Source: Ministeria vibrans ATCC 50519
Lineage: Eukaryota; Protista; Filasterea
Assembly (NCBI GenBank): GCA_943704425.1
Contig: CALSCP010000216.1
Coordinates: 69,033-133,032 of the forward strand
Direction of reading: 5' to 3'
DNA: 64,000 bases
Shown: positions 2,530-38,537 of the stretch, one piece after another
Layout: each line of letters opens with the position of its first letter
Position numbering within the stretch: position 1 is the stretch's first letter
Program-made: the position numbers and the translations under genes
The notes under the pieces: model-generated
Told to the model about the DNA's origin: nothing
The model's input: the letters and a program-made list of their open reading frames with translations, nothing else
Databases searched by the model: none

Positions 2530-3758
2530 TCCTTGTGGTCATTGGCAACCTCGTCAAGACGACTCAGCTCGGACGGAGAAATGTGATCGCTCGTCGCCGT
2601 GCCCTCGACAAAAACACCACCGCCTGCTGACTCTGGTCTATCCTGAGCGTCGACGGTGTCGTTGGAGGAGTAAGTGTCGAGAATGTCGAGGACACTGGCC
2701 GAACCAAAGCTGACACGATCAGCACTGGGCGTGCGAGATGAAGGAATGCTGCTGCTTGGAGTTCGCGACGAAGAGGTGGAGCGACGGGGCGGCACTTTGG
2801 GAGGCATCGACATGTCTGCGATCGAGTGCGACGTAGACTTGACCATGACCGACTGAGCGCGATCGAAACCACCGGCGCCTGCGCCCATGACTGACGATGA
2901 ATTAGAAGGGGATGACTGTGCGGTGCTGGTGGGGGACGAGGAGGAGGCGGTGGTGGCGGAGGAGGGTGTGGCGCCAACGGGAGCGACATCCTTCATGGTG
3001 CTCTCCGATGAGAATACTGTGTGGCTGCGCCGGAGACTGGCTGCGCCAATGGCGGCGGCAGCGCGACCGTGAGGCACGGAGGTCTGTTTGGTGAGGACGG
3101 GCACGACACGGTGTTGAGGTGCCGAGGACGGTGCTTGACCACCCGGCAATGGTAAATTGGAATAGACAGCGTCCGAGACGGAGGCATCCCAAGCAGACTG
3201 GGTAACGGGAGCGCGAGCGGCTGCGGCGGCCGCTGCTCGTTTGCGAGGAGGCGCAGCGGGCTCGCCCACCTTACGTCGTGTCGCCTCGTTGTTGGCGGCT
3301 GCTTCGACCCACAGGCGCTGTTTGAGTTCGGCTAAAGATGTATGATCCCCGACATCGACAAGTGTGTAGGGCAGAGGCGCCGACGGCGGAACGTCCGGCG
3401 ATTCGGAGCTGTTGTCCTTGTTGCGTGTCGACTTGGCCAGCAGACGATTGACGGTGGAGGCACTGTGCGAGGCAGGGGGGAGGATTTTGACGGTGACTTT
3501 GGCACAGACAGGAGGGCGCTTGACGAAAGGACGGGAGACGCGGCCGGGAACGCAGGCAATGCGGCTGCCTGAGCCAGGCAACGCCGTGAGCTTCAGACGC
3601 ACCGAGACGGGCGTGAACGACCGCACACTCTGCTCAATACGGCTGTCGGCCTCGTAGAACGCCGCACGCTTGTTCAGACGAATGCCTCGGTACAGAAGCG
3701 TGCTCCTGCACCAAAGAGAGGGAGCGAGAAGCCGCAGAGAGTGAGTGACGGGTGAGCG

Positions 3759-20750: not shown

Positions 20751-23700
20751 TCAGTGCCCATACTTGGACCGGCGACTCTCAAACTGTTCGTTGCCCTCCT
20801 GCACTACAATTGCCGGGTCGCGCTGCCTCCAATAGTCCCGTTCCGCCGCCTCCTCCCGATCAAGCTTGGCCTTCTCGCGTGTCAGAAGCGACATGAGCTT
20901 GCGCCACTCCATCTCGGCGGCCTGCAGGCGCTCACGCGCCGCATGCACATGCGGCAGCTCCATGTATTCCTTGTGCCGTCGCACCCACTTGGTATTGAAT
21001 GCGTCCTGAATTGCTTCAATATGCACTCCAATCTGATGCGTGTACGAGCGCGAGCTGGTCAGCTCAGAGCGACGTTGAGCACACGCATGGTCCACCGCAA
21101 TCTCATCCCACATGAGGTCCGTTGCCTCAGCGTCCACCTCGCTCGCCTCCACGTCAGCCACTTCGGACGAATGAAAACCTGGCAACAACGACCGTCGCTG
21201 TGCCACAATCGCCGTGTAGTAGGCAAGCCACAGCTGCTTCTCCGCGTTGATAGCCAACGAGCGGAGCACCTTAAGCTCTTTGAAGACGGAAAAGGCCAGC
21301 GAACTGTGTACCTCAACAAACTGCAGTGCTAGGTTGCGATGGAGCTCCTGTGGCATCTGCTCCAGCGCATCGGCATGACTCACAAGCAGCGATGCAGACA
21401 GCGCGCCGCATCGACCCGCCACCGAAAAGGCAACCTGCACACAATGAAAAATCCCTTCGTCCTGCACCCGGCGAATCGGCATGCACGACATGAGCGCCGG
21501 CTCGCGCGCATCCGCAACGTGCTCGCGCGGACGCCACGCAAACGTGTACACCTTGTCGGGCGCTCGATTAATCATGCGCGCCAAAATCTTCTCAGGCAAC
21601 TCTTCCTCACCATCGCCCACGCGCTTAGGAATGCCCATCAGCTGCAGTCGCAGTCGCGATGGCACCGTAGTGCTCACTATCGTCCCATCGTCGCCAGTAC
21701 GCTCGCTCGCCACTGTCGTCACCTTCTCTCCTTCTCCTCCTGACCCCGTTGCCTTCTCCGCGACAATCATAAAGCGACAGCCGTGCCACTCAAACACCTG
21801 TGCATTCCGTTCAGCCTCCGCCATTTTCTGCTCCATTTCCCAGCGCGTCGAAAAAACAAGGACGTGCTCTCCACGCGAGAGCATCCCGTCCAGCTCCATC
21901 GACAGTGCCCCAGTCTCTTCGTCCTCATACACCGCATACACCAGACGCGCAATCTTCTTCACGTACACCTGAACACCTTCCGCGCGCACATCACTCGCCG
22001 CGGATCGGTCCGGCTCATAGTGCAACGTGTAACCGTCGGAGAACACTTCGTGCGACGTAACCAGCGCCTGTCCCGGCAGCCCCCCCTCCGCCGTCACCAC
22101 CTTCAGTGTGTCGTCGCTCTTGGATGCACCGCCAAACGCGTGTGAGGCTACCTCCGAGCGAATCGGATGGCTCAGCTCGTCATCAAGACACGCATCGCCG
22201 CCCACATACAACGTCTGAATGCGCACCAACCAGCGCTTGCCGCGGCCCAGCATCAGTCCGCCCGGTAGCTCCATCACAATACTGTCACGGTTGCGCTCCA
22301 GCGCCGCCGCTCCATCGCGATCCACCGTCCGCCGCTGTTCGGTGCACGCCCACTCGCCCACCGCCTTCTGATACGCCGCCGGCACGGGTACATGCGCGTG
22401 TACCACCTTCCAGTGAACCGTCCGACTGCTCCCGTGCTCCGCCTCGTTGTAGTCCGACAACAGCTCCACCTGGCGTTCCGCCGCACTCAGTCGTCGCACC
22501 GCCTCCGTCTCCTCAGTGTACTCAATGCGATAACCCAGCACACGCACATTCTGCCCAGAGACAACACGAGGGCGCCAGCTGACAGAAAATCCCTCCAGTG
22601 CCCCATACACAAAGTGACTTTCGTTCCGCGACACCAAAAATTGTTGTACAGGTCCCGGAGGCGACAGTGGAAAGCGCGTGCTCAGCGTCGATACATTTGA
22701 TCGCTGCGGCGCCAGTCGACGCACCGCCTTAAACACCACCTCAACCCACACGTCGTAGCGCTTACACGGTTTCAGATCGCCAAAAGCCGCTCGATACTCG
22801 CGCGAGCCTTCCTCCACAGGCAAGCCTTTGGACTTGAGAGGCGCATTCGCGTCGTCTTCGTACGCCTCCAGTGCCGCCTCGTCCTCCTCGTCCTCCTCGT
22901 CCTCCTCGTCGTCGTCGTCATCGTCCGCAATGCCATCGCTGTTGGCACGTCCGCGTGTTGTCAGCATCGGATGTGTTGCCCATTCATCGTCGTCGCCGTC
23001 CTCCTCATCGTCGGCAGCCTCCAGTCGAAATAACACCGTCGTCTTGGTCGTGTCAAAGCCCTCAGGGGCAACCCAGCGCAAGGCCAACGAACGCTCGCGT
23101 CGCATAGTGGCACTCGGCATTTGCGGGCGGAACTTTCCAATGACATACAAAAAGTGTCGCTTCGGCGGCTCCGACGGATCTTCGGGCGTCACCGTGATGG
23201 CAAGACTCAAGAACATACCAGGATGGACACGCAGCGGCATCGTGACCTCTTCACCATCCACGTCGGCAGACGCACCCGCCTTACGCGCATCTGCTTGCAA
23301 CTTGCGTCGCCCAAACGTACCACCCCGACGCATGGTCTTCATCGCCGCCTGCTTAGCACTACGCTCAATGTCCAGCGCAACGTGCCACGCGGAGCATTTG
23401 GCGCGAGGATGCGTCTGTGGACGCAAGTCCACCATGGTCCACTTGCGCGTTTGCACACGAATCACACCGTCCATCGACTTGACTGTCGTCGATGCTTCGA
23501 GTCCTCGTGTTCGTGTGCAGTGCCCAACCACGCACGCGACATCGGCGTCGTCACTCAATGCGTACAGGTGAATAAAGTGATTCTTGGGCGGTCCCTTCTG
23601 CGCCTTCACCTGTACCTGCACCACCGTCTCATAGCCGGGCAGCACATCAACCTCCTCCTTGCCACGCACCTCTCGTCGCGACACACCACTGTCCTCCTCC

Positions 23701-26700
23701 GCCATGCGCACTGCACTCGCCTTGCCCTCCTCCTGTCCGTCCGGAAGATCTCGTGGTTCAAAGGCATACAGGGTTGTGCTCGTCGTGGAAGCCTCAGGCT
23801 TCACATGTATCACTACCTTGCCGGGCACATCCGCACGGTGGTGAATGCCGTCCGGGTCGCTCCGCAAGTGAATACCACCTGAGTTCTTGCCCTTGAGCGT
23901 GCTCACTTGAATAACATTGAGGGTCGTGTTGCATTCGTTTGATGCACACGTTGTCACCGACACCGGCGCCGACCATGGCCCCGCAAGAACCACCTGTTGG
24001 TCAGTCTCAACGACGAGCCGTGCAAACAATCGATGTTCCGTGTTCGCCTGCAAACCCTCAATCACAAGCTCGCGTAGACGCGCCACGTCTCGTTCCTTCA
24101 CGCGCGCCACAACCGTCTTTGAGTCGTCTGCATTACCCGCTTTGCCCGTCGTCGCCACCATCTGATAGTACCGCTGTGAGACACCCGCACGCTCAGCCAT
24201 CAGCAAAGGCTCGAGTCGTGCCTCATGACACGACACCGATGCACTCGAGTCGAGCACATTGGCGATGTCCAGCAAATGAGGCGCATCGCCACCGCCGACA
24301 ATTACTTGACGCGCCTCGTCGCCCAACGATCGAGTAAGCAAGGTGCGCCACAGCTCACGATGATACTGCGGCTCCTTCGTCGTCATGGTGAAGCGAGGAT
24401 CGCTCCAGGGTCCCGCCATCGTCATCTCAGTGCCCGTCGGATTGCCGTGTGTGTCCCGGAAGCGCATGCTGAGGACGGCACGAACGCGCAACGTGTACTT
24501 GGTGTTCTCAGGCACGTTAGCCAGGCACACAATGGTATCGTCGCGTACGGGTCGCTCGTCAGGTAGTCCACTTTCGTCGCGATTGTGCGCCACCGGCTCG
24601 ATCCACTCGTCCATACCTCGGTTAATGCCAATGTTCACTTGACGACGCACAATGCACATTTGCGGCATCACACTGCCCGCTCGCTGGCCCGTCTCGTCGG
24701 CCCAACTCAGCGAGCGCTCAGTCACACGTACCACCATGGAGCGGTCAAGCGGTGTGATCTCCACGGGAGGGTCCACGTGCAACACATCCGTCTCGACAAG
24801 CGCCTCGACCGTCTCATGGGAGGTCTCCACACCACGAGGAGGTGTGGTGAACCAGTCAATAATGGTATACGAGCCGGCAGCCTTCACCGACTCAGCCCCG
24901 CCGCTCTCATCGCGTGTTACCAACCGCCGTGCCACCACAGTGTAAGCGGTGCCTGGCTGGACGGGCACCCAGGTACCCTGCGAGTCGGCAATGATGGCAC
25001 ACGAGGATGGATCGGGACGCCACTTTACCATGTCTTTCTTCACCATGTTACCGGGAACCACGCGGAATTCGTAGCGTATCACGTCACTCTCGGGCATCGC
25101 CAACTGCACATGTGCTGCATTGGTTAACACGATCGGTGAACGCGCACACCGCACGGGAGGAAGTGCCTCATGCCGATCAAACTCCGCCTGTAGTCGAAAG
25201 TTGCGCTCGTCGCTCTCAAGTCGCGACAAGATCTCGTGATCGTGGTCGACGGTATTCGCGTTGCGCGCCGAACCAAACACTTCAAGAGCCCGAGGCACCA
25301 CTGGTACCGGTGGAATGGGCACTTCTTCCGGGACCTTTGCTAGCGGTGGCTGTGCCTCTGGCGCCGCTTTCGGGTTGCTCGGGCCTGGCGGCTCAGGTTT
25401 TGCTGCCTTTGGTTCAGCAACAAACACACTGACCGTACCTTCGTCCAGATAGGAAGGATTCAGTATCAATGGGGCCGGATCTTCTCCGTTGAAGGAGTCG
25501 GACGAATCGGAAAAGACTGACATTTGCAAAGAGTTCAACCGTTCGTGACCCTGCTTATGGCGGTGGCGACGACGACTACGACGGCGCGCGCAGAGCACAC
25601 AACAACAGCCAAGAAGGAGAACCAAAAGCAACCCAGCAAGACCAGCCGCAAGGTAAATCCAGGGAAACGAAGCGGCGGGATCAGAAACGGTCGAAACAAT
25701 TGTCTGACACGCGAACAAAGACGGATCGCCCACTGCACTTCGAATGTGCTGGCACTTGGTACCGGTGGGACACGCCACGCAACAACCGTCTTGCTCCGAC
25801 GTGGGCGCCTGAATCGACCCAGTCGTCGTGTACGACGAGTTGGTTGGCACACAGCCTTCGTTGTTGCAAAGTGCCGCGCAGGGTTCGCACGTATAATTGA
25901 CCAAGTTGGGTCGCGTGTCGACTGGACACGCAAGAAGACAAAGCGTGTTCGCCTCGGGGGTACATTTGGACACCTCAAAGCGAAGCGAATCTTGACAGTT
26001 GGTGCACCGTGTGCATTGACGATCAGCCAGGGTTGTACAGGGTTGTGACTGGTAGTGTCCGTGGGGACAGCCGACGGAACACGGGACGCACGTGGCTGTT
26101 GCATTGAGGGTGAGGCCGGTACATGGCGCATCGAGAAAGGTTGCGCCAATCGTACACTGTGCAGCTGTCATGCAATCGTTGCAAATTGTGTTGTGCGTCG
26201 AGTTGCACCCCCGTTCAATATACTCGTGCACTTCACACTCGTGGCATACGGTGCAGTTGAGACCGTCGCCCCACTGGCCAGGCGGACAAGGTGCACAGTC
26301 AAAGCCTAAATCAGGCGCGGCCCGATCCGTGCAGTTGGTGAAACAGGGCGACGTGCGACACGCATCAATGTCACGACAGGTGCGATCGTGCGTTGCGTTG
26401 CATGCAAGATGGTCCTCAAAGCCAGCGGGGCAGCTGTGAAGCGGTGTGCAGGCAGCGCACAGTGTACGAGCGTCGCCAAAATATCCACTGTGGCATTCAC
26501 ATGTGTAGGCGCCTACCAAATTGGTGCAGTTGGCATTGGAAACACACACACTCGGTGTTTCAACACACTCGTTGATGTCCATGTCGCACACAGAGCCAGT
26601 CCAGCCAGCGGCACACGCACATGTAAAGCCGTTGAACAGATCGCTGCATGTGCCGTCGTTGGCACACGGGTTGGACGCACACTCTTGCAGCTCACATTCG

Positions 26701-29700
26701 CACGAGGGTCCGGTGAGTCCAGCAGGACAGTCACACACAAATCGCGCGATTGCATCAATGCAAATGCCGCCCTTGAGACACGCGCCATCAATGGGTAGAC
26801 TGGAATTAAACGTGGTGGGTCGCATCCAGGGCAGCGGGCACATCAAATCGCTCTCGGTGTCATTCAGTGCGCCGCCGAAAAGCAGTAGAGCAGCCAGTGG
26901 ATTCACCCCGTAGCTCACAGCCTGCGCAATCGTCGCGGGTGCGCACTCGTCAATGTTAATTTCGCAACAGGGCCCGGTGAAACCCGCGGCGCACGCACAC
27001 GAGCCGTTGAAGGCTACACAGTGGGCCGAAGCAGCAATGCCGCCCGATGGAGCAATATCAAGACACGTGCCATTATTAAGGCATGGCGATAGTGGCTCTT
27101 GATTGGCAAAACTCGTTTTGATGTAGTTGTAGCAAGAGGAATTGCGCACGAGAAGTGTTTCACAGAAAGTGCCGGTGTACTCGGGCGGACACGAGCAAAA
27201 GTCACAGGAGGTGTCGTTGAGCAAGCCCCCGTTGAAGCAAGGGTCGCCAATCTCACAGAGATCGCCGTGAAAGCCTCCAACGCACTCACAGCGATAGCGC
27301 GGATCCGTCGGCGACTCAATAGGAATGTCCAGACACGACCCGCAATTTTGGCATGGATTGATGGCGCACGCAGTGGTATTCACCTCACAAAGTGCACCGT
27401 ACACGCCAAGGGGACAGTCGCAGCGCCACGGATTGCCAAACCGTGACAAATCGCTCCCAGCCATGTCGGTGCAGGAGCCTTGCACACAGGTGATGTTGTG
27501 CGCGTCGCAGCCGTCGATGTCCTCGTCGCAACGCACACCTCGATACCCCTCGCGACACGTGCACGCAAAAGCGAGCGCGACACCATCGGTACAATTGATC
27601 GCGCCCGTGATACTACACGGGACAGTACGGCACACGTCAACGTCGTCTTGGCACGTGGGTCCTTCAAAACCCTCAGGACAGGCACAGACAAATGAGGCAA
27701 GTGCAGGACGCAGAATGCAGGTGGCGCCCACGCCGCAGGGCGACGACCCACAGAAATCCACCTCGGTCTCACAACGGGAGCCCGTGTAGCCCGCTGTACA
27801 CGTACACTTAGGCACAAGACCCAAGTCGACACAGCTGCCGCGATGCTGACATGGGTTCGGATCACAATGGTCAATCTCGACGGAGCAGAGCGTGCCGGTG
27901 TAACCTTGTGGGCACAGGCAGACAAACGAAGCGCCAATAAGAGCACAGGTGCTGCCCGATGCACATGGTGCACCTGCACACGGATCGGGCACGGTGCCAA
28001 TAGGTGTGCACGACAGTGGGTTCGTGAGCAGCCCTTGAGAGTTACAAGTGCGCACAAAGAAGTTGGTGCCATTGAGAAAGCCGTTGGTCGTGAATCCTCC
28101 ATCGCACACGTACACGGCCGTATCGCCAAACACAAGCTCGGTGCCAGCCGGTGTCACTGTGGCATTGGCAATGTTTGGCGCAACGCCACAGCGAATGCGC
28201 TCGAGACAGAGGGTGTTGACAAAACCTTGCGCACACACACACTCAAACGAGGAGAGTCCATCGAGACAGGTGCCACCATGAGCACACGGGTTCGAGAGAC
28301 ACTCGTCAAAATCCACATCGCAGAGGGTACCAGTCCAGCCAGCGGCACAAGTGCACGCAAAGGTACATGCGTCTACAGTGTTGGCGGTGCACACGCCGCC
28401 ATTGGCACATGGATTTGACGAGCACACGTCAACTGACGCGTCACAAGTGGCACCAGTGAATCCACAAGAACACGCGCACGAGTACCCTCCCAAGTGGTCT
28501 GTGCAGTTACCGCCGTTGGCACAGGGTAGAAGCAGTTGGCTCTGCAGTGGAATTACTCCGTGTTGGTCCCAGTAGTCTAGCGTCGCTTGGAGTGTGAGGG
28601 GCCTGCAGAAGGTTTGGACAATGTCACAGTGAGTACCAATGAACCCTGTTGGACAGGTGCACGTTTGACCGGCGGCAACGAGAAGGGTACAATTGGCACA
28701 CTGCGTGTCAAAGAGAGCATTGCACTCGCTCACAAGTGACTCCCCCTGCCCACACGTGCTGCACGGCTCACACGTGCCTGTCTGCGCATTCGCATAGAAC
28801 CCAGCATGACAAAAGCGCACGCAGCGATCTTCAAACAACGTCAAGTTTTGGCTGGCGTTGCACTCGACACAAACACGTGCGCTCGTACACGTGACACAAC
28901 CAGGTTCGCATGCAGTGCACGTGCGATCTTCCGTCGCAGTGCACGCCTGACTCTCAAATGTACCGGAGGGACATCCGAGCTGACAGGGTGTGCACAATGC
29001 ATCGCTGTTGGGTAGCGGTGCAAACGAGCCGGAGGGACACGCGGCACAGACACGATCGGTGCTCGAGAGGCACGGGGCGCTTTGATGGAAGCCAGCCGAG
29101 CAGAGGGTGCAGATTTGACAGATAGTATCAAAAGAGCCGTGACAACCGGCAAGTGCAAAAGTGCTGGGGGAGCAGATGGAGCACGGATCGCACGAGGTGC
29201 TCTGAATGCCGTCGGCACATGTGCCATTAAGAAACTCGCCCAAAGCACAAGACGTCTCACACGGCTCGCATGCCTCACCACCGTTGACGGCCTTGAACGA
29301 TCCTTGGGGACAAGCAACACACTGGTCGTCGGTCGACGCTCCACATATGCCGAGGAGCTCTTGGCCCGGTGGACACGCCGACGTGCAGTTGGCACAGTTG
29401 CGATCGGCAAAGCCCGAACTCAGACAGCCACCCGAGGCAAATTGGTTGGCGCCGCAGAGAGTGCAGGGCCGACATTCGCGCGTCGGCGACACAACCTTGT
29501 AGTAATCAGATGGGCATGTGCTCACGCACGTCTGCGAGGCGGACAAAAGAAAGGTGGGGTCAACGCACGCAACGCAGTTGTTGCTGTCTGGACCAAAGCA
29601 GGCAGCGCACGCAGGGTTGCAGGGAAGACAAGCACTGCCGCTGGCATCTTGGTAGTTTCCGGTAGTACACGCACTCACACAAGAAGATCCCTCGAGGAGA

Positions 29701-32700
29701 AAAGAGCCCACGCAAGTGAGACACGTCGAGGGGGAGTTGCGCGCGCAAGTAGCGCACGTGGAGTCACACGGCGTGCAGACGGGTGTCGACGTGGCCGTAC
29801 AGTCGCCTACAAGGGTTTCGGCAACCGAAGGGCACGACGCGGTACATGGCGAGCAGGGGAGGGCGGAGCGTGTGAGTGAGTAATGCTGTGGAGGACACAC
29901 TGGGCACGACGGCGATGTGATCGACGTGCAACTGCCAGTCAGCTCGGTGCCCGCATCGCACGCCTGAGTGCACGCCGCGCAAGCAACATTGCCCACCAAA
30001 GGCTTGAATGTGCCCGTAGTACACGGCAAGCAAATCTGGTTTTGAGTCGCGCTGCATGCGGCACTGAGGGTAAACCCCGCCCCACACATTGTCGAAGTAC
30101 ACGGCGTGCATAAAGTCGCAGCTGAAGCGATCCCTTTGAAGGTATTTGGCGGACAAGGTGAACACTGCAGCGTGAGTAGGCCGTTGCCGCACAGACCTGA
30201 CTGAAACAAGCCGGCGGGGCAATCTGCGGAGGGACATGCAGCGCAGACACGGTCGTTCGTTGGTGTGGGTGAGACCATCTCGAATTCGGTTGCATTGCAG
30301 ACGCGCAGTGGTGTGCAGCCCGTGTCGTAAAAGAGGGTGCACGCTCGCGATACAAAGCTTGTGCTGGGACAGGTCGAGCAAGATTGACATACAGTGTCGA
30401 CGCTGAGAGAACAGTTTTGCGTGGCAAAGGAGACGCCCGAGATGCATGTGGTGCACGCCTGGCACTGGCGTTGAGCAGTGGCGGTGCAAGGTGACACCTC
30501 AAAGGTGATGCCAAAGGAGCAGGAAATACAGGCAGGACAAGTGCCCGTCGTGGCATCAAGATAAAACCCCGGTACGATGGCGCTGAGTCCCTGAGTGCCA
30601 CAACAAGTGGCGCAACCCGAGGGACACGCAGTGAAAATGGGCAATGGAGAAAATTCGCCCGACATGACGGGAGCATAGCTACCGGGGACATTGTCGTTGA
30701 GTTGGAGCACGTAGTTGTTAGGTCCATCCCAATCTGTGTTGAGATAGGTGACAGTAGTTGCAGCAGAGGTCAGTCCACCCGCGTCATAACGCACTACGAC
30801 CACTGCCACCTGGATGGTGGTCGCCTCCGAGACGACTAGCGACGCACGAGCAGAAAAGGTGGCGCCACTCTGAGTGGCAAGAACAACTTCATTGCTCGAG
30901 ACCATGGTGCCTTGGCAGGCAGTCGCAGTCAGTGTGCCAGTCACAGGTTTCAAGTGAAAGTACACATCGGCGGTGACTGACGACGCTGGGGTCGGCGTAT
31001 CGGCAAGAGAGGCACTCAGTTGAAAGGAGGGTCCAACCTGAATGGGAGCTTCAAACTCCGCAATGTATGTGGCGGCCGAAATAGCACGGTTGAGGCGAGA
31101 CACGTCATTAATTTGAAGCAATTGGTTGTGATCAACGTCGAGCACGTCAAGATCCAGTACAACTCCCGGCGCAGCGACGCAGGGCGAGGTGAGAGAATTT
31201 TGACACTGATGTACGAGGAACAATTGGAGCAGCTGGGCGTCGGTGCCTGTCACTTGTGCGTCGCAGTTAACATCACCACGAACAGGTGTGACCATGCAGG
31301 CAGTGGCACGAGTAACACGCGAGACTTCGTGGTTGGCAGTTAATGCGCTGTCGAGGTCAGCGCTTCCAGGAGGGAGTTGGATGCTGGAAAAAATTCGCGC
31401 GAGATCCTCCTCGACATCTTCTTCTTCGATCCCATCGTCGCGTCGACGCCGACGCCCGAGCGAGGCCGAGACAACCATGGCGCCTGTGCCCGCCTGAAAG
31501 GTACGAGGGTATGACACCGACGCGATAAGCGTGTTGCCAGCGCGGTTGTTCAGTTCGACAAGGCTGCCACTGAAACTGGCCGTCCCCGACGTCCCAGCGC
31601 GTGCACGGAACGTGAGGGTGACCACGGAGACAACGTTGGTCAGGAGACCCGTCGACTTAACGAGACCCAACACACGAACACAGCCGACACAGACGGCATC
31701 GGGTGTGACAAGAATTTCGCTCCAGTCACTACGCGAGTCACGTTGGGAGCCAAGCAATTCGAGACGCGTCTTGTCGTAGTACACATCAGCAAGAAAGAAG
31801 CCCAGGGGTATGGAGCCCACATTGACACGCACCTCGATGTCAAATTGAACGCCTGGTGCCATTTGAGCGAATGGAAAGGACACGAGAGGGCCCAGATCAA
31901 CGTCGCCCATGACGGGAGCAAGATTACAGCTTACCGCGGCGGTATCGCTTGTTGAAGAGCTGCACGACAGCTTCGCCATAATCTCTACCGGTGACGAGCC
32001 GACGCTGTTCAAACGAAGTGTTACCAAACCTGTGGCAGAATCGACGCTGGCAATCGAGCTGTTACTCGACGAGTATGCAAGAGGGATGTCGGAGCGTGCG
32101 CTCGCAGCGGTCACACGTGTGCCATCGGCGAGAACCAAATCAACGTAGGTCTGCGCGGTAGCAACTCCCGACTGTCCCACAAGGGTGAAGCCCATCTCGG
32201 TCGGCGATTGAAAGTAGGTGACCATCAACGTGACGGAAACAGGCGAGTTGAGGGCACCAAAGGACTCGGTGGCGTCCACGCCGTTCCCGTTCAGTCCAAA
32301 ATTGGCACTGACCGTGACAGTCCCAGGCGATTCGGGAGTCACCACCACCACACCGCTGGTGGCGGAGTAATAGCGCGACTCAGGCGCCGAAATAATACCG
32401 TTAGTGGCCGTGAAGATAGTATGTTGTGTGACAGGTTGAGAAGCGCCGTCGCTGGCCACAAGCTTGAGGCTAAGTGACCGTTGTTGAAAGGGAGCAAGGG
32501 CGCAACCGAGACGCCCCACGTCGTCGTCGCCGAGGTCGACCATGTCGCTTGGCCACAGATTGACGGCGCCTGAGTTTACGTCGGGTGGATACTGGTGCAC
32601 ACCGACGGTGAACGAGTCGGTGGCAACGACGCTGATGGTGACCGGGTCAGACGCGACCGCATGTTGACCTGGTAATTTGACAGTGGCCACAAGCGTGAGG

Positions 32701-35700
32701 GTTCCACTCGAGGCACCCGTTGGCGTGGCACTCGGTTGTGCGGTCACAACCAATCGAGAGGGATCGCTCGAGGTAATGGATGTGCTATCGCTCGTAGAAA
32801 ATGTCGCCTGGAGACCCGTCTCGAAGATGACCAAGACAAAAAGCGAGCTGCTGGTAGACAATCCAAGGAGTGCGAGAGGATCGGAGGCACTAATGGCCAG
32901 ACGCGGCTCTGTGACGGAGAGGGTGACAGAGGCAATTTTGGGAAACTTGACGACAACGGTCGCCGAGGTGCGAAGGAGCGTGGCGAGACCGGCTTGAAAC
33001 GCGACTGAATTTTCGGAGCAGGTCGAAAAAATTCCTTCAAGACCTTCGCGACACCAGTCAAACATTGCAAGCGCACGGTATGTTGGCATGCCCGCAAGGT
33101 CGACCGCATCGACCACACGCACGGCACCTTCAGTCAGGTTAGCGTGGACGAGGAGCGAGCCGGGTGTGACACGGGTCACTTCTTGAACGGTACCATCACT
33201 GAGGAGGAGCCACACAATGATTTCGGCCTCGGCACCGGGCACCTCGAGGCTCTGTACGACGCCAGTCACGTTGATGGTTGCGCCCGGCATGCCTGCTGCA
33301 TCGAAAGTCGTAAGAGGTGTGGCGCCCGACGACGACGTGAGTAGTCCCGTGGCGGCAGCGACATGTAGTGACACAATGGTCACTGGTGCACTCGTGGACA
33401 CCGTCAGCAAAGTGCTGGCCAACGGAGTTTGGTCGGACGGACGGAGTGCAGAGATAGGTGTTGTCCCCGTCGTGAGACCCTCAATGATTACAGAAGACGT
33501 GGACGAGCTGGGAATGCTTTCGGTGCGCACGCTTGCAACGGCGTTGTTGTCGGCGGTAAGCGAGACAAGGCCCGTCACGTCGACCGTGCCCGCTTGAACA
33601 GAACCGTCCGCGTTTTGCAGGGTGGCGAGCACATGCGCGCCAGTGGACTGGAAACGATTGGCGTTGCTGGCGGTACTCTGACAGTCAGCGGGATAGTGTT
33701 GAATGGACTGCAACGTGGAGCGGTCAAGAACAACGCGCAACGAAGCAAAGGACCACGGTGAGAATACCATGGACGTTTGTTTCGAGTCGAGCGTCGCCAC
33801 GACTTCCGTGGCGGCGACTGGAGAAGGCACTACCTCGCCACCAGTAAGCTGCACTTGACAGCCACCGGTGCGAGATGTGACCGAAAACATGTTGTTATGA
33901 AGCGCAGAGCAGGCAGTGGGTGTGACGAGCGTGACGGGTGTGGAAGCGGACGAGTAGACGGCGTAGGTGTGAAGATCGCGAGTCAGAGATTCCCCCGTCA
34001 ACATGGCCGTGTTGACAAGGTTGTTTGAGGGTGTCTCGGAGGTGGAGGTGGGGGCGCGCATCAGAAGAATACCGCGCAAATCGTTGGTGCGAAACGAGAC
34101 ACTCCCTTGACTGCTTCGTCCCGTCGCATCGTCAAAGGTACAAGGGGTTGAAGCGTCGCCAAACTCGGCGTTTCCATCACTGAGCTGAATACCACCGCAC
34201 CCGAATAGAGCCGTGGAAGCAGTGACGACCGACGACCTGACTGTGAAGCGCACGGTCGCAAGGGGAACAGCAGTGCCTGATGTGGTGACCGTGTCGGTTG
34301 TGAGGCCATTGAGACCAAGGGTGCCCAGCGACGAGACTTTGATTAGGCCACTGAAGCCAATGGCAATCGTGGATCCTTGAGTGTCGTCGTGTGCTGTGAC
34401 CGAGGAGCTGTCGTACGTGAGCGTCACCTGCCAAGCTTTAAGAGTACGCGGAAGCACCGACGCAAAGACGCTGGTGGTGAAGGTGTCGCCGGGTGCGAGA
34501 GGCGCCAGTGGAAGCGACCAGTAGACAGCAATGTCGGCGATGGGAGGCGAGTAGGTGACTGTCGCGTGCAAGCTGGGCATGGCGGTGAGCCCAGTGACGG
34601 CAAGGGGCGCGGCCGCAGACGCGCTGGGTGATGTAAATGCGAGCAGCAAGGGGACTGCTGCGGATGGCGAGAACCAGGCGGTCGGCAGCCCGAGACTGAA
34701 GACGCACGGTGCGACGCCGACATGGCACGTCTCCGAACGAGTGTCGGCGGGCACGGTAGCGCGCGCCACGACCAATGCTAGCGTAGAGCCGCTGATCACA
34801 AGCGAGCTGCCCGTGGCATCGTACGCGGCTGCTACGACTCGTACGTTGGGCGCATCCACAAAAATGGAGTCGGCGAGCGCAATTGCCTCAACCCGAGCAA
34901 TCTGCCGCCGTGGCTTGTCGCTGAATTGCGTCGACGAGAGAGACTGTTGTAGTAGTGGGCGTCTGGCGAGGGAAATAGCCTTTGGAGCGACATCGTCGGA
35001 GCTAGTCGCGATCTGAAAAACAATACGTGAATAAAAATAATGAATTAATGAAGATAGTCACTCAATACTGTGCACTCAGACGTCAGAGAACTGAAGACCG
35101 TAAGGTAAAGAGAGTTCAACAGTGAGCAGAAGAAAGTAGAATGCTGAGATGACTCGGAGAGAAGGAAATGGGGACGATTGTTATTGCGAGCAGGTTTAGT
35201 GTCGAGCGATATCGAAGCGCACGGAACGTGTGCACATTTGAAGGCCGGTGAATGGTTTTAGTGGCATACTTGCAATGTGGCAGTGTAAAATTTGGATTCT
35301 TATCGAGGGGGAGGGGGGGCGCGTCCGACTTTTTGACGGGGTGATTGTTAATCCCAACCCTTTTGACGCTATTTTGCGGTGATTATGCGAATTTTCTATT
35401 TTACCGGGAAAGTCGTTGAGTCGGCGGATTCGACTGCAACAACGCTTGGTACAAGCTGTGGAGTGGCTTGCAAAAAGGATTGTGAGATGAGTTGGGTAGG
35501 GAGAGGGAGGCGAAGGTCGGGAGACAAGCACGGCAGGTCGACAGCTGTTGCGTTTGCGCATGTGCAGTTGTGGCTCGACGTGGCGACGCTTCCTGAGCAG
35601 TCTAGAGTAAGCAGCTGGAAGCACGAACTGTCTGAATCAAGCTGGCAGGTGCGGTAGAGTGCAATCTGTGTTGACGGCAAACCGGTCGACACTGTCCCCG

Positions 35701-35809
35701 CAGTGACATTTGACGAGCAAGGGTTGCACTGGGCAGACTGTACGGTCAGCAGAAGCCAAAGGCCCAAGAGGGGAGCAAAGATACGCAGGAAGGTTGTTAT
35801 CGAGGCCAT
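20751..35809 (-). CDS. Giant type I membrane protein (~4,890 aa): signal peptide, TMEM132-like cohesin/Ig region, second cohesin, dockerin, Cys-rich TNFR/furin-like repeats, EGF repeats, sushi-like module, TM helix, cytoplasmic FN3-like repeats
   Basis: Exon 1 (35809-35405, signal peptide MASITTFLRIFAPLLGLWLLL) splices in phase 0 to a single exon 35012-20751 that contains the 4702-aa ORF. Motifs: LVNTAMLTG and IVWLLLSDG (TMEM132-like), GDVNCDAQVTGTD..DVDHNQLLQIND (dockerin), many CxxNPC..C.C..GxTGxxC EGF repeats, and the TM helix WIYLAAGLAGLLLVLLLGCCCVLCA. Confidence 0.9.
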
Positions 35810-36324: not shown

Positions 36325-38537
36325 ATGGCATGTCCTTACTGCAACTCTGATGTGAGCGGTCTTGTACAGCAAGTCAAGGAACGCGACCGGCGCATTCGGG
36401 TGCTGGAGGCGCAGCTTGCATCGGCCAAAGGAGAGCGAGACGAGAGTCGACGACAATTTAGCGCGCTTCACACGCAGCTTGCTGCGGCCCCGGGCGTCAG
36501 CGAGCTCAATCGAATCAATCAGAGTGTCCGTCATATTGATCTGGAGTCAGTTGCGCGGGAACGTGAGCAGCGGAGGAGCGAATTTGAAACGGCTCGACTG
36601 GCGGCAATTGAGGCGTCGCGCCTCGCGACACTCGCACAGGAGCGACTTCAGCAGCTGTCCACACCGTACGAGAAACACCCGTGTTTAACTAGACACAAGC
36701 TTTGCTTGGTGGCGCGCGCGCGTCATATTGTTTTGGGAGAGAAAGAAAGGATTTCACACTTGCATACTTGTGTTTGTTTGTGTAGTGAACGATCAGTGTT
36801 GGTTGCTCGCGAAATTCACTTTGACCAAACGCGACCGGGTTCCTTTGAAGTACCAACCGACCACTATCGTGACCGTCCAGGCGTCGCGCGCGTTGTGACT
36901 CGCCCCATAAGCGGATCTCGCGTCAGCTCGACAGGCGGCCAGTCTCCCTCGCCACGGCCCAACGTCAACCCTGGCGGAAGCAGCTGTGTCGAGGATATTG
37001 TTGACGACGCCGACAAAGATACTGATCATGAAGAACTTCCTCCTACCATTGCGCCCCGGACGAGCAAGTCTGTATCCGTCTCGCACGAGTCAAACGTCTA
37101 CGTGAGCGCGTCTGATTTAGTCGAGCCCGCTCGCAACCCTTGGCCAGTGCCGACCCCCAGCGCTAGTGCAGTTCCAGCGCCAGCTGTGACGCGTCCAACA
37201 TCAACATCAACGTCAACGTCAACGTCAACGTCATCAACGCCGGCGCCGGGCGGAAAAAGTGAAAGTTCATTTTTTGCACCCTCGTCGTCGGATTATTCGA
37301 GGTCGACGAGTAACATGGTCGAGAACGAGTACTGCGAGATACTTGACGATGACCCGCGAACCGAGTCAAACAATGAGGTGCCCAGCGAAAGGCATTTTTC
37401 ACAGGCCGGCATTTATGGCGATCTTCCACTGTTTTTGGGCGAGGTGGAGGCAAATCAATTGCTTGTTGACGACGCAAACATCGCAACCATTGGTAGCGGC
37501 AGCATGAGCTCGGTCATGCGCGGTCGCTTGCAGTTGCGACGTGACGGACGCACGAGTGTACCGGTGGCGGTAAAACGTTTGCTGCCCGACGCGCGCGGTC
37601 GCTTTCGTGAGGAGCAAAAGTACGCCTTCAAGAAGGAAGTTGAGCACTTGTTGCAGCTGCGGCATCCTCATATTGTACAAATGCTGGCTCATGTGCAGAA
37701 GGGCACTAACCCGGCCGATTGGGCGATTGTTCTCGAACTGGCTGGCTGCTCCTTGGACAAGTTTCTCCGCCAGAACCCTCGATTTCTCGAACCCGATCGT
37801 GTCACTGCCGCACTCCAGATTGTAGATGCCTGTCAATTTCTGTCCAAGCAAAATGTCTTTCATCGAGACGTAAGTACGAAAAATGAGGATAAGAGTCCAC
37901 TCACACAATATAATAATTATTATTAATTATTATTATTATATTTTTGTCAAACTTTTAATGTTTTTCTCATGAATATTGCGTTTCATTTGACAGTTGGCAG
38001 CTCGAAACTGTCTTGTGTTCTTGGACAGAGACACCGACTACTTGGTCATGAAGTTATCGGATTTTGGAATGAGTCGCAAAGCAAACATAGATGCAGGGGA
38101 AGAGGTACAAAAATAGAATAAGATAATAATTAATAATAATATTTTTTCCGCAAAGATGTAAAAAGGATAATAATAATAATAATAATAATAATTATTATTA
38201 ATTGTACTATTTTTAGCCAATATATGAGCAAACCAACTTTACAACCCTTCCGGCGCAAAGTGCTCCTGAGACGTGGAACGACGCGATAACCACAAGCGCA
38301 TCGGACGTGTATCAATTTGGCTACTTACTCTGGGAGATTGTTTCTTCCTCTCCGCTCGGTTGGACGTGCCCATATTTTGAGACGCTTACTCGCGTTGGGT
38401 CGCTTCCGCGTCTACCAGGTGCTCATGCGCAGCTTCTTCTTCTCATGGACAAATGTGTGGATGAAAATCCTGCCAAACGTCCTTCGTTTGCCACGGTCGC
38501 GCAAAGACTCCACAACGTTTCACGTTCATTTCAATAA
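36325..38537 (+). CDS. Cytoplasmic tyrosine kinase(-like) protein with N-terminal coiled coil, no SH2/SH3 or TM recognised
   Basis: Spliced kinase domain (introns 37870-37993 and 38105-38216): IGSGSMSSV, VAVKRL, FKKEV, FHRD|LAARNCLV, KLSDFGMSR, APE, SDVYQFGYLLWEI and RPSF. Confidence 0.88.

What the first reader, a model, noticed from the sequence alone, without database searches (positions are those of the whole stretch)
31077..34540. Cohesin - furin site - dockerin 'latch' inside a TMEM132-like eukaryotic receptor
Seen in the sequence: the ectodomain of the giant ORF has a cohesin-like module (~34540-34095), TMEM132-like Ig repeats and a second cohesin-like module (~31865-31470, FDIEVRVNVGSIPLGFFLADVYYDKTRLE..VVTLTFRA). 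These are followed by a polybasic site LGRRRRRDD (~31455-31435), a second RVTR site, and a complete duplicated dockerin with both Ca-binding loops: GDVNCDAQVTGTDAQLL and DVDHNQLLQINDVSRL. Established: cohesin-dockerin pairs are high-affinity, mechanically strong couplers of bacterial cellulosomes. Animal TMEM132 proteins carry a cohesin but, to my knowledge, no dockerin, and non-cellulosomal cohesin/dockerin modules are reported only sporadically in eukaryotes such as choanoflagellates. Inference: convertase cleavage would separate the cohesin head from the membrane-anchored dockerin stalk. The two could re-associate in cis as a Ca-dependent, force-releasable latch (analogous to the Notch heterodimer or adhesion-GPCR GAIN domain), or in trans as a cell-cell adhesion or scaffold system. 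This is the best candidate for an undescribed system in the window.
Basis: partly seen in the sequence, partly recalled or inferred. Interest (0 to 1): 0.88.

Follow-up and report, generated by a model that had tools for sequence, protein, structure and literature searches.

The report
Cohesin–convertase site–dockerin joint in receptor
A giant surface receptor of a marine protist carries a genuine cohesin and a genuine dockerin separated by a conserved furin-type cutting site, so it is probably cut in two and held together by this bacterial-style "plug and socket"; this would be an undescribed way of building a releasable receptor.

Summary
The 4,702-codon exon (window 20751-35012, minus strand) encodes cohesin 1, TMEM132-type Ig domains, more Ig-like domains, cohesin 2, an RRRRR site, an acidic spacer ending in RVTR, and a two-loop dockerin.

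- **Modules:** The window's own Pfam scores are below threshold. A 35-sequence family profile still hits solved type I dockerins (E 5e-8) and cohesins (E 2e-5). An AlphaFold model (pLDDT 78, pTM 0.73) superposes on solved cohesins (Z 12.7-14.8) and on a solved dockerin (Z 9.3, rmsd 2.0 Å).
- **Basic site:** In 72 homologous eukaryote-type units, 68 have a dibasic site within 14 residues after cohesin 2 (background 3.4%). 37 have RX[KR]R there (background 0.29%), and 42 have a second RX[KR]R further on in the spacer.
- **Bacterial relatives:** These join cohesin 2 to the dockerin through about 15 residues with no basic site.
- **Genome context:** The genome has two furin/kexin-type convertases and no other cohesin or dockerin gene. 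RNA-derived contigs show the gene is spliced and transcribed.

Best reading, about 50%: a convertase-processed heterodimer held by a Ca-dependent cohesin 2-dockerin joint.

The parts
35405..35809 (-). Exon 1: start codon at 35809-35807 and a hydrophobic signal peptide, 135 codons, ending in phase 0
   Evidence: RNA-type contigs X3 and X4 join 35405 to 35012. The exon was translated on its own. Pfam finds no family in it.
35013..35404 (-). 392-base spliceosomal intron (GT..AG on the minus strand)
   Evidence: It is skipped in contigs of runs X3 and X4 and present in DNA runs X1 and X7. Its ends read GTAAAATA and TTTTTCAG.
20751..35012 (-). Exon 2: uninterrupted coding exon of 4,753 codons plus the stop codon (20751-20753). 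It comprises 51 codons upstream of the listed ORF start plus the 4,702-codon ORF.
   Evidence: The X3 contig of 14,390 bases runs colinear with the genome over the part laid.
34176..34517 (-). Cohesin 1 (ORF 115-228)
   Evidence: Pfam Cohesin E 0.004. iE 1.2e-17 to the cohesin 2 family profile. The A1 profile hits it in the genome search at E 5e-10.
33153..34028 (-). TMEM132-type Ig domains 4th, 5th and 6th (ORF 278-569)
   Evidence: Pfam PF16070, PF23486 and PF23487 match in order, sub-threshold here and over threshold in homologues.
31908..33152 (-). Further Ig-like (BIG-like) domains linking the TMEM132 core to cohesin 2 (ORF 570-984)
   Evidence: This stretch aligns throughout with homologues in phmmer. 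The domain type is inferred from composition and from a weak LigB-like match of the profile flank.
31461..31907 (-). Cohesin 2 (ORF 985-1133), nine-stranded beta sandwich; the last strand ends 2 residues before the basic site
   Evidence: AF2 pLDDT above 90. Foldseek E 2.6e-8 to 6kgf_C. VIA Z 12.7-14.8 to 13 solved cohesins. Profile E 1.7e-5 to 4ums_A.
31440..31454 (-). Basic site 1, RRRRR (ORF 1136-1140): predicted proprotein-convertase cleavage site
   Evidence: Sequence read. The position is conserved in 68 of 72 homologous units as [KR]R and in 37 of 72 as RX[KR]R. It lies in a segment with pLDDT below 50.
31320..31439 (-). Acidic, variable spacer (ORF 1141-1180), predicted to be excised or left as a tail
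   Evidence: Low pLDDT. In homologues the stretch from the end of cohesin 2 to the dockerin, which includes this spacer, is 24-84 residues long and unconserved, with Arg at 16.5% of residues against 4.6% overall.
31308..31319 (-). Basic site 2, RVTR (ORF 1181-1184), a minimal RxxR motif just before the first Cys of the dockerin segment
   Evidence: It aligns with the RX[KR]R found upstream of the dockerin in 42 of 72 units.
31068..31286 (-). Type I dockerin-like module (ORF 1192-1264): two Ca-loop plus helix repeats, with four Cys in and around it
   Evidence: Pfam Dockerin_1 E 0.015. Family profile E 5e-8 to 4fl4_A and 1.7e-6 to 2ccl_B. VIA Z 9.3, rmsd 2.0 A, to 2ccl_B.
25590..30626 (-). Remainder of the ectodomain and the membrane anchor: TNFR-type Cys repeats (16 stretches), EGF repeats (10) and the TM helix at ORF 3067-3090
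   Evidence: Pfam results. The TM helix was read from the translation.

Best explanation
The gene encodes a type I membrane receptor of about 4,890 residues. Its N-terminal roughly 1,300 residues form a 'long TMEM132-like cassette': cohesin 1, TMEM132-type Ig domains, further Ig-like domains, cohesin 2, and then a dockerin.

Proposed mechanism:
1. In the secretory pathway a furin/kexin-type convertase cuts after RRRRR, immediately behind the last strand of cohesin 2.
2. It probably also cuts after RVTR, just before the dockerin, which would remove or loosen an acidic spacer.
3. The N-terminal fragment then stays on the membrane-anchored fragment only through a non-covalent, Ca-dependent contact between cohesin 2 and the adjacent dockerin.
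4. Any pull between a ligand bound by the head and the cell is therefore carried by that contact. The joint could act as a releasable link, for shedding or signalling above a force threshold or on loss of Ca.

Shown here: the modules are real, the basic sites are conserved in eukaryotic relatives and absent from bacterial relatives, convertases exist in the genome, and the gene is transcribed and has a signal peptide.

Inferred: cleavage, docking in cis, Ca dependence and release.
For: - Real modules: profile hits to solved dockerins (E 5e-8) and cohesins (E 1.7e-5). Model-to-structure matches of Z 12.7-14.8 for the cohesin and Z 9.3, rmsd 2.0 A, for the dockerin.
- Site conservation: 68 of 72 units have [KR]R within 14 residues after cohesin 2, against 3.4% of background windows. 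37 of 72 have RX[KR]R, against 0.29%. 42 of 72 have a second RX[KR]R further on in the spacer. Arg, not Lys, is the enriched residue (alignment). The majority consensus of 25 eukaryote-type proteins itself reads RRR ... RxRR ... C ... GDxNGDC.
- The spacer has low pLDDT, so it is likely exposed.
- Bacterial relatives join the two modules through about 15 residues with no basic residue. One of them lies among bacterial genes and in a bacterial MAG. The eukaryotic spacer is therefore an insertion exactly at the cohesin-dockerin junction.
- pTM is 0.73 for 316 residues, of which about 235 are ordered. By inference this needs the dockerin to be placed confidently relative to the cohesin.
- The genome has two S8 plus P-domain convertases.
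- No other cohesin or dockerin was found in the genome, so the only cohesin partners are in the same protein.
- The same joint sits upstream of a family-B 7TM domain without a GPS motif in P0115, at the position where adhesion GPCRs have their autoproteolytic GAIN domain.
- The gene is transcribed and spliced, and it has a signal peptide.
Against: - No cleavage or binding data exist.
- The complex prediction with controls could not be run, and the geometry of the predicted contact could not be inspected.
- The window's own Pfam scores for Cohesin and Dockerin_1 are below the curated cut-offs.
- Site 2 in this protein is only RxxR.
- A few eukaryotic units lack basic sites: 4 of 72, and two units of P0134. 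Cleavage is therefore not obligatory for the module.
- Each unit has two cohesins for one dockerin, so the partner could be cohesin 1 or a cohesin on another molecule.
- The genome search is six-frame and exon by exon, so divergent partners could have been missed.
Confidence: 0.5

Rival explanations
1. The dockerin binds in trans or at long range. After cleavage, or without it, the dockerin engages cohesin 1 of the same chain or a cohesin of a neighbouring molecule or cell. This would give homophilic adhesion or lateral scaffolding rather than a cis joint.
For: There are two cohesins per dockerin in every unit. Up to four units occur in tandem in giant cadherins, which are adhesion molecules. 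No other cohesin or dockerin gene is in the genome, so self-association is the only cohesin-based option.
Against: In bacterial relatives cohesin 2 and the dockerin are joined by about 15 residues. Nearest language-model clusters are small bacterial proteins annotated with Cohesin and Dockerin_1 (a lead only). Both points suggest that cohesin 2 plus dockerin is one unit. The pTM of 0.73 argues for a defined cis arrangement.
Confidence: 0.2
2. The cleavage is simple maturation or shedding. The convertase releases the ~1,300-residue head as a soluble factor. The dockerin is only a Ca-stabilised structural module at the new N-terminus of the stalk and binds no cohesin.
For: The basic sites are conserved and convertases are present. 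Many non-cellulosomal dockerins have no known partner (general knowledge).
Against: [quoted passage not shown] It also does not explain why the pair is kept together from bacteria to eukaryotes.
Confidence: 0.15
3. There is no cleavage. Cohesin 2 and the dockerin form a rigid two-domain unit as in bacteria, and the Arg-rich loop serves another purpose, for example binding anionic glycans or membranes.
For: Bacterial relatives work without any site. Some eukaryotic units lack it. Site 2 in this protein is weak.
Against: The enrichment is for Arg in the RX[KR]R pattern at both ends of a spacer that is otherwise unconserved and of variable length. Lys is not enriched: 2.2% in the spacer against 2.4% overall. 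This is the signature of convertase sites rather than of a charge patch.
Confidence: 0.15

Closest known systems
Animal TMEM132 proteins and the TMEM132-like region of choanoflagellate/sponge cadherins (hedgling, coherin, lefftyrin), Sanchez-Pulido and Ponting 2018, PMC6030884
   Same: A cohesin followed by three BIG-type Ig domains in the same order, in a type I membrane adhesion-type protein.
   Different: The cassette here continues with more Ig-like domains, a second cohesin, a convertase site and a dockerin. The paper describes five conserved extracellular domains in human TMEM132, without a second cohesin or a dockerin, and states that no dockerin homologue is detectable in vertebrates. 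No TMEM132D_N or TMEM132D_C match was found here. The remainder of the protein is TNFR/EGF repeats and a 1,600-residue tail.
Type I cohesin-dockerin pairs of bacterial cellulosomes (e.g. 1OHZ, 2CCL, 6KGC)
   Same: The same two folds. The dockerin keeps both Ca loops. Profile and structure matches are to exactly these modules.
   Different: Both modules lie on one eukaryotic polypeptide, adjacent, and separated by a cleavable spacer. There are no enzymes or scaffoldins. The dockerin carries extra Cys residues. Binding is untested.
Bacterial giant surface proteins with the same cassette but directly fused cohesin 2-dockerin (P0003/P0129 class, with Dicty_CTDC repeats)
   Same: Cohesin 1, TMEM132-type Ig, cohesin 2 and dockerin in the same order, at 26-29% identity over about 1,000 residues.
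   Different: There is no spacer and no basic site. The junction reads VAGxGxLDPDC..GNANGDCEF. The gene context is bacterial.
Notch S1 heterodimer, adhesion-GPCR GAIN domain, mucin SEA domain
   Same: The resemblance is one of working principle only: a receptor cut during biosynthesis whose halves stay together non-covalently, so that force or loss of the head changes its state. Notch is cut by furin, and its heterodimer is Ca-dependent (established knowledge).
   Different: The folds are unrelated. Here the joint would be made of two separate, pre-existing binding modules rather than of one split domain. GAIN and SEA domains cut themselves, whereas this would need a convertase.

Membership tests
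Cohesin (PF00963) | Score over the curated Pfam threshold | tested here: not met
   For the window sequence, cohesin 1 scores 17.7 bits against 24.1, and cohesin 2 has no hit. Homologues score 25.8-43.5 bits at the cohesin 2 position.
Cohesin (PF00963) | Nine-stranded beta-sandwich fold of solved cohesins | tested here: met
   The AF2 model of ORF 985-1133 has pLDDT above 90. It matches 13 solved cohesins at Z 12.7-14.8, rmsd 2.2-2.8 A. Foldseek gives E 2.6e-8. The family profile gives E 1.7e-5 to 4ums_A.
Cohesin (PF00963) | Binds a dockerin | not testable with these tools
Only pTM 0.73 of the single-chain model is available.
Dockerin type I (PF00404) | Score over the curated Pfam threshold | tested here: not met
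   The window scores 15.9 bits against 22.9. In detailed scans homologues score 17.5-19.3 bits, and the best E-value among 25 scanned members is 2.4e-5. The family profile against solved dockerins reaches E 5e-8.
Dockerin type I (PF00404) | Duplicated segment, each with a 12-residue Ca loop (D/N at positions 1, 3, 5, 12) followed by a helix | tested here: met
   The loops start at ORF 1196 and ORF 1241-1242, and both keep D/N at 1, 3, 5 and 12. Helices follow each loop. The whole module aligns to 2ccl_B over 61 of 62 residues at rmsd 2.0 A, Z 9.3.
Dockerin type I (PF00404) | Ca-dependent folding and cohesin binding | not testable with these tools
   This needs recombinant protein.
TMEM132 family | Cohesin followed by Ig 4th, 5th and 6th in this order | tested here: met
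   The order is kept. Scores are 23.0, 18.4 and 13.1 bits, sub-threshold here. PF16070 is found in 19 of 25 homologues, with a best E-value of 1e-22.
TMEM132 family | TMEM132 N-terminal and C-terminal (TM plus cytoplasmic) regions, overall size about 1,000-1,100 residues | tested here: not met
   No PF15705 or PF15706 match was found in the ORF, the exons or the tail. The protein has about 4,890 residues with TNFR/EGF arrays. It carries a TMEM132-like cassette and is not an orthologue.
Proprotein-convertase substrates | Exposed RX[KR]R motif in a secretory protein, with a convertase present in the organism | tested here: met
   RRRRR lies in a segment with pLDDT below 50. A signal peptide is present. 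The genome has two S8 plus P-domain genes. The motif is conserved.
Proprotein-convertase substrates | Actual cleavage | not testable with these tools
   This needs protein chemistry.

The most novel reading that the evidence does not exclude
The cohesin 2 - convertase-excised spacer - dockerin unit is a widespread, so far unrecognised coupling device of eukaryotic surface receptors. It would have been inherited from a bacterial fused cohesin-dockerin didomain and made separable by inserting convertase sites at the junction. It would do for giant cadherins, for this TNFR/EGF receptor and for a GPS-less family-B 7TM receptor what the GAIN domain and the Notch heterodimerisation domain do elsewhere: hold a shed-able head on a signalling stalk through a Ca-dependent, force-limited bond. 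It would also supply the missing dockerin partner for TMEM132-type cohesins.
Probability: 0.4. Interest if true: 0.85.

Novelty: new variant of a known kind. Interest (0 to 1): 0.76.

Why it matters
Cohesin-dockerin pairs are among the strongest known protein-protein bonds, yet they have no established role in eukaryotic cell-surface biology. The 2018 description of the TMEM132 cohesin left open what it binds, because no dockerin is detectable in vertebrates.

This locus and its roughly 90 related units show three things:
- The ancestral cassette ends in a second cohesin and a dockerin.
- Eukaryotes placed conserved convertase sites exactly between them.
- The cassette is attached to cadherins, 7TM receptors and TNFR/EGF receptors.

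If the two halves stay bound after cleavage, this is a third, independently evolved solution to building a mechanically releasable receptor, alongside Notch and the GAIN/SEA domains. It would be made from modules whose rupture forces can be measured and engineered. It would also give a concrete, testable hypothesis for the origin and function of the TMEM132 family.

Tried and rejected
- **Single-sequence AF2 of ORF 960-1300.** It gave pLDDT 37 and was useless.
- **Pfam searches of the whole genome.** Dockerin_1 and Cohesin gave no hit at E 0.01 and 0.1. The window's own modules are too divergent for these models, so this alone is weak evidence of absence. The family profile A1 found only this gene.
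- **phmmer of the window segment against solved chains.** It gave only non-significant dockerin hits, E 0.8-1.4.
- **The beta-rich domain after the dockerin (ORF 1262-1412).** It has no detectable relative among the 126 homologues, so the conserved unit ends near ORF 1300.
- **GAIN/GPS domain in the 7TM relative P0115.** None was found: no Pfam hit at E 0.1 and no CxC..HL(T/S) motif before TM1.
- **Papers.** Peer et al. 2009 and Nichols et al. 2012 are not held in the library. I therefore could not check whether they mention dockerins in choanoflagellate cadherins.
- **Naming the source organisms of the homologues.** Cluster look-ups give no names, and proteins over 5,000 residues cannot be traced to contigs.
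- **Identity of this genome.** It could not be established. Its DNA is also seen in seawater and algae metagenomes.

Full report
**Gene and transcript**

The finding lies in one very long open frame on the minus strand (window 20751-34859, 4,702 codons). Contigs of two RNA-type public runs (X3, X4) skip window 35013-35404. The skipped stretch is 392 bases with GT..AG ends on the minus strand. Two DNA runs (X1, X7) carry the unspliced form. The gene is therefore transcribed and spliced.

Translated exon by exon, exon 1 (35405-35809) begins with an ATG and a hydrophobic signal peptide and ends in phase 0. Exon 2 starts at 35012, 51 codons upstream of the ORF start listed by the tool. The precursor has about 4,890 residues.

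Exons were searched separately, and exon 1 and the head of exon 2 match no Pfam family. Pfam on the ORF shows 16 TNFR-type Cys repeats and 10 EGF repeats. A TM helix lies at ORF 3067-3090. The tail has about 1,600 residues with only a weak FN3 signal.

**Check of the observation**

With the window sequence alone, Pfam support is weak but ordered:

| Element | ORF residues | Pfam result |
|---|---|---|
| Cohesin 1 | 121-217 | E 0.004 |
| Ig_TMEM132_4th | 278-361 | 23.0 bits |
| Ig_TMEM132_5th | 395-489 | 18.4 bits |
| Ig_TMEM132_6th | 528-569 | 13.1 bits |
| Dockerin_1 | about 1196-1260 | E 0.015 |

The second cohesin has no Pfam hit of its own. Taken alone, this would not be convincing.

**Relatives settle the identity of the modules**

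A full HMMER scan of 1.84 billion representative proteins with ORF 100-1299 found 126 relatives. The best has only 27% identity, and this genome's own records are apparently left out.

An iterative profile grown from ORF 990-1300 on these proteins shows one recurring unit:
- a cohesin, recovered at the position of cohesin 1 (iE 1e-17 in this protein);
- about 770 residues of Ig-like domains;
- a second cohesin;
- a dockerin-like segment.

Up to four such units stand in tandem in giant proteins. In homologues the second cohesin passes the Pfam Cohesin threshold (25.8-43.5 bits) and Ig_TMEM132_4th passes its threshold.

A 35-sequence alignment (A1) with the window segment first was used as a profile against all solved chains. 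It hits type I dockerins over both repeats (4fl4_A E 5e-8, 2ccl_B 1.7e-6, 1ohz_B 1.1e-5) and cohesins (4ums_A 1.7e-5).

AlphaFold2 with this alignment gives mean pLDDT 78 and pTM 0.73:
- The cohesin part (model 1-149) has pLDDT above 90. It superposes on 13 solved cohesins at Z 12.7-14.8 (Foldseek E 2.6e-8).
- The dockerin part (model 208-280, ORF 1192-1264) superposes on the C. thermocellum Xyn10B dockerin 2ccl_B at Z 9.3, rmsd 2.0 A, over 61 of 62 residues.

Both Ca loops of the window's dockerin keep D/N at positions 1, 3, 5 and 12 (read). The modules are real.

**The basic site is conserved, and only in eukaryote-type relatives**

In the alignment of units, an Arg cluster follows the last cohesin strand at the same place in nearly all sequences. 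A second one often precedes a short Cys-containing segment in front of the dockerin.

| Measure (72 homologous units, this protein excluded) | Units | Background |
|---|---|---|
| [KR]R within 14 residues after cohesin 2 | 68 of 72 | 3.4% of 14-residue windows elsewhere in the same proteins |
| RX[KR]R in the same 14 residues | 37 of 72 | 0.29% |
| A second RX[KR]R further on in the spacer | 42 of 72 | not computed |

Arg makes up 16.5% of the spacer against 4.6% overall, while Lys is not enriched. The spacer is 24-84 residues long and otherwise unconserved. Even the majority consensus of 25 such proteins reads RRR ... RxRR ... C ... GDxNGDC. In the model the spacer has pLDDT below 50.

A second class of about 18 relatives has no spacer. 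There, cohesin 2 runs into the dockerin through about 15 residues (VAGxGxLDPDC ... GNANGDCEF) with no basic residue. One of these (P0129) lies among NorB, OmpA and M3 peptidase genes on compact contigs and in a bacterial MAG of the GTDB set.

The spacer class is eukaryotic:
- this gene itself;
- P0019, next to and containing cadherin repeats;
- P0132-P0134, cadherins of 6,100-7,900 residues on megabase scaffolds, P0132 and P0133 with three full units each;
- fusion partners such as ankyrin, SH3, Kunitz, PAN, EGF and a family-B 7TM domain.

**Context in this genome**

Two genes with a subtilase S8 domain followed by a proprotein-convertase P domain are present. The family profile, Pfam Cohesin, Pfam Dockerin_1 and Ig_TMEM132_4th find no other locus than this gene. 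If the dockerin binds a cohesin at all, that cohesin is therefore one of the two in the same gene product. The caveat is that these are six-frame, exon-by-exon searches.

**Mechanism**

The most economical reading has three parts:
- Bacteria have a fused cohesin-dockerin didomain at the end of this cassette.
- Eukaryotes inserted a spacer flanked by convertase sites exactly at the junction.
- After processing in the secretory pathway, the head (signal peptide to RRRRR, about 1,300 residues) is held on the stalk only by the cohesin 2-dockerin contact. The stalk comprises the dockerin, TNFR/EGF repeats, the TM helix and the tail.

The pTM of 0.73 for a 316-residue chain with about 235 ordered residues could hardly be reached unless AlphaFold places the dockerin confidently relative to the cohesin. 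This is my inference.

The topology means that tension would pass from the N-terminus of cohesin 2 to the C-terminus of the dockerin. Cleavage, Ca dependence and release are all inferred.

A relative supports the functional analogy with adhesion GPCRs. P0115 carries the same joint (RRRD ... HSRRS ... dockerin), followed by an Ig-like domain, a Ser/Thr-rich stalk and a 7tm_2 domain (68.8 bits). It has no GPS motif and no GAIN hit.

**Rivals**

1. The dockerin binds cohesin 1 or a cohesin on another molecule, giving adhesion or scaffolding. The 2:1 cohesin-to-dockerin ratio and the cadherin context fit this reading.
2. Cleavage only sheds the head, and the dockerin is a structural Ca module.
3. 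There is no cleavage, and the Arg cluster has another role. Some eukaryotic units lack the site, and site 2 here is only RxxR.

The position-specific, Arg-specific RX[KR]R pattern at both ends of an unconserved spacer argues against rival 3. The conservation of the cohesin-dockerin adjacency from bacteria onward argues against rival 2.

**Comparison with what is known**

Sanchez-Pulido and Ponting (PMC6030884) made four relevant points:
- They described the cohesin plus three BIG-type Ig architecture of TMEM132.
- They found it in choanoflagellate and sponge cadherins.
- They noted the strength of bacterial cohesin-dockerin bonds.

In the held library this is the only paper that mentions TMEM132 together with dockerin. 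Only one other paper mentions both dockerin and choanoflagellates, once each, and it is on an unrelated metallopeptidase domain. Two possibly relevant papers, Peer 2009 and Nichols 2012, are not held.

Precomputed Pfam tables already list Dockerin_1 on some of the giant cadherins, so the raw domain hit is in public data. I found no description of the conserved order cohesin - convertase site - dockerin, its bacterial spacer-less counterpart, or its possible role.

This protein is not a TMEM132 orthologue, because the N- and C-terminal TMEM132 regions are not detected. It carries a longer cassette. According to the paper's domain map, animal TMEM132 lacks the part of the cassette from the extra Ig domains through the dockerin.

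**Verdict**

| Claim | Status or confidence |
|---|---|
| Observation | confirmed |
| Modules are genuine cohesins and a dockerin | about 0.95 |
| Basic site is a conserved convertase site | about 0.7 |
| Cis latch | about 0.5 |

I class it as a new variant of known kinds, namely cohesin-dockerin pairing and convertase-processed heterodimeric receptors. Interest is high because it makes a specific open question directly testable.

Noticed in passing
P0115 (1,903 aa), residues 660-1430: A relative joins the TMEM132-like cassette and the cohesin 2 - RRR - spacer - RR - dockerin joint to a family-B (secretin/adhesion type) 7TM domain, which scores 68.8 bits. No GPS motif or GAIN hit lies between them. 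Only an Ig-like domain and a Ser/Thr-rich stalk are there.
   Followed up: partly
L002:5927-15154 (P0129) and L012/L013: Bacterial proteins of 1,775-6,939 residues carry the whole cassette, with TMEM132-type Ig domains over the Pfam threshold and Dictyostelium-type Cys repeats. Cohesin 2 is fused directly to the dockerin. A 'eukaryotic' TMEM132 cassette in bacteria raises the question of which way it was transferred.
   Followed up: partly
P0001, P0016, P0043, P0132, P0133: Three to four complete cassettes, each ending in cohesin 2 - basic site - dockerin, stand in tandem inside single giant proteins, several of which carry cadherin repeats. Full processing would cut such a protein into a chain of non-covalently linked pieces.
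   Followed up: no
window 36325-37926 (+): The divergent neighbour, about 500 bases from the receptor's start codon, encodes the N-terminal half of a protein tyrosine/Ser-Thr kinase domain (PF07714, 69 bits). This matches an earlier first-reader note about a receptor without a kinase lying next to a kinase without a receptor.
   Followed up: partly
window 35812 and upstream: The X4 transcript contig leaves the genome 3 bases before the ATG and continues with 38 unmatched letters. This may be a further 5' UTR exon, a leader or an assembly chimera. There is no AG acceptor at that point.
   Followed up: no
window 30630-31070 (ORF 1262-1412): The beta-rich domain between the dockerin and the first Cys-rich repeat has no detectable relative among the 126 homologues.
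   Followed up: partly
window 30960-34859: Near-identical DNA of this stretch is held by seawater and algae metagenome runs from several studies. The organism is therefore probably marine and not rare.
   Followed up: no
ORF 1188, 1199, 1218, 1226 (window about 31180-31300): Four Cys lie in and around the dockerin. In eukaryotic relatives a C..PC..C motif precedes the first Ca loop, and a Cys sits inside the loop (GDC). Bacterial relatives have only DPDC and GDC. These are likely disulfides that staple the new N-terminus to the dockerin.
   Followed up: no
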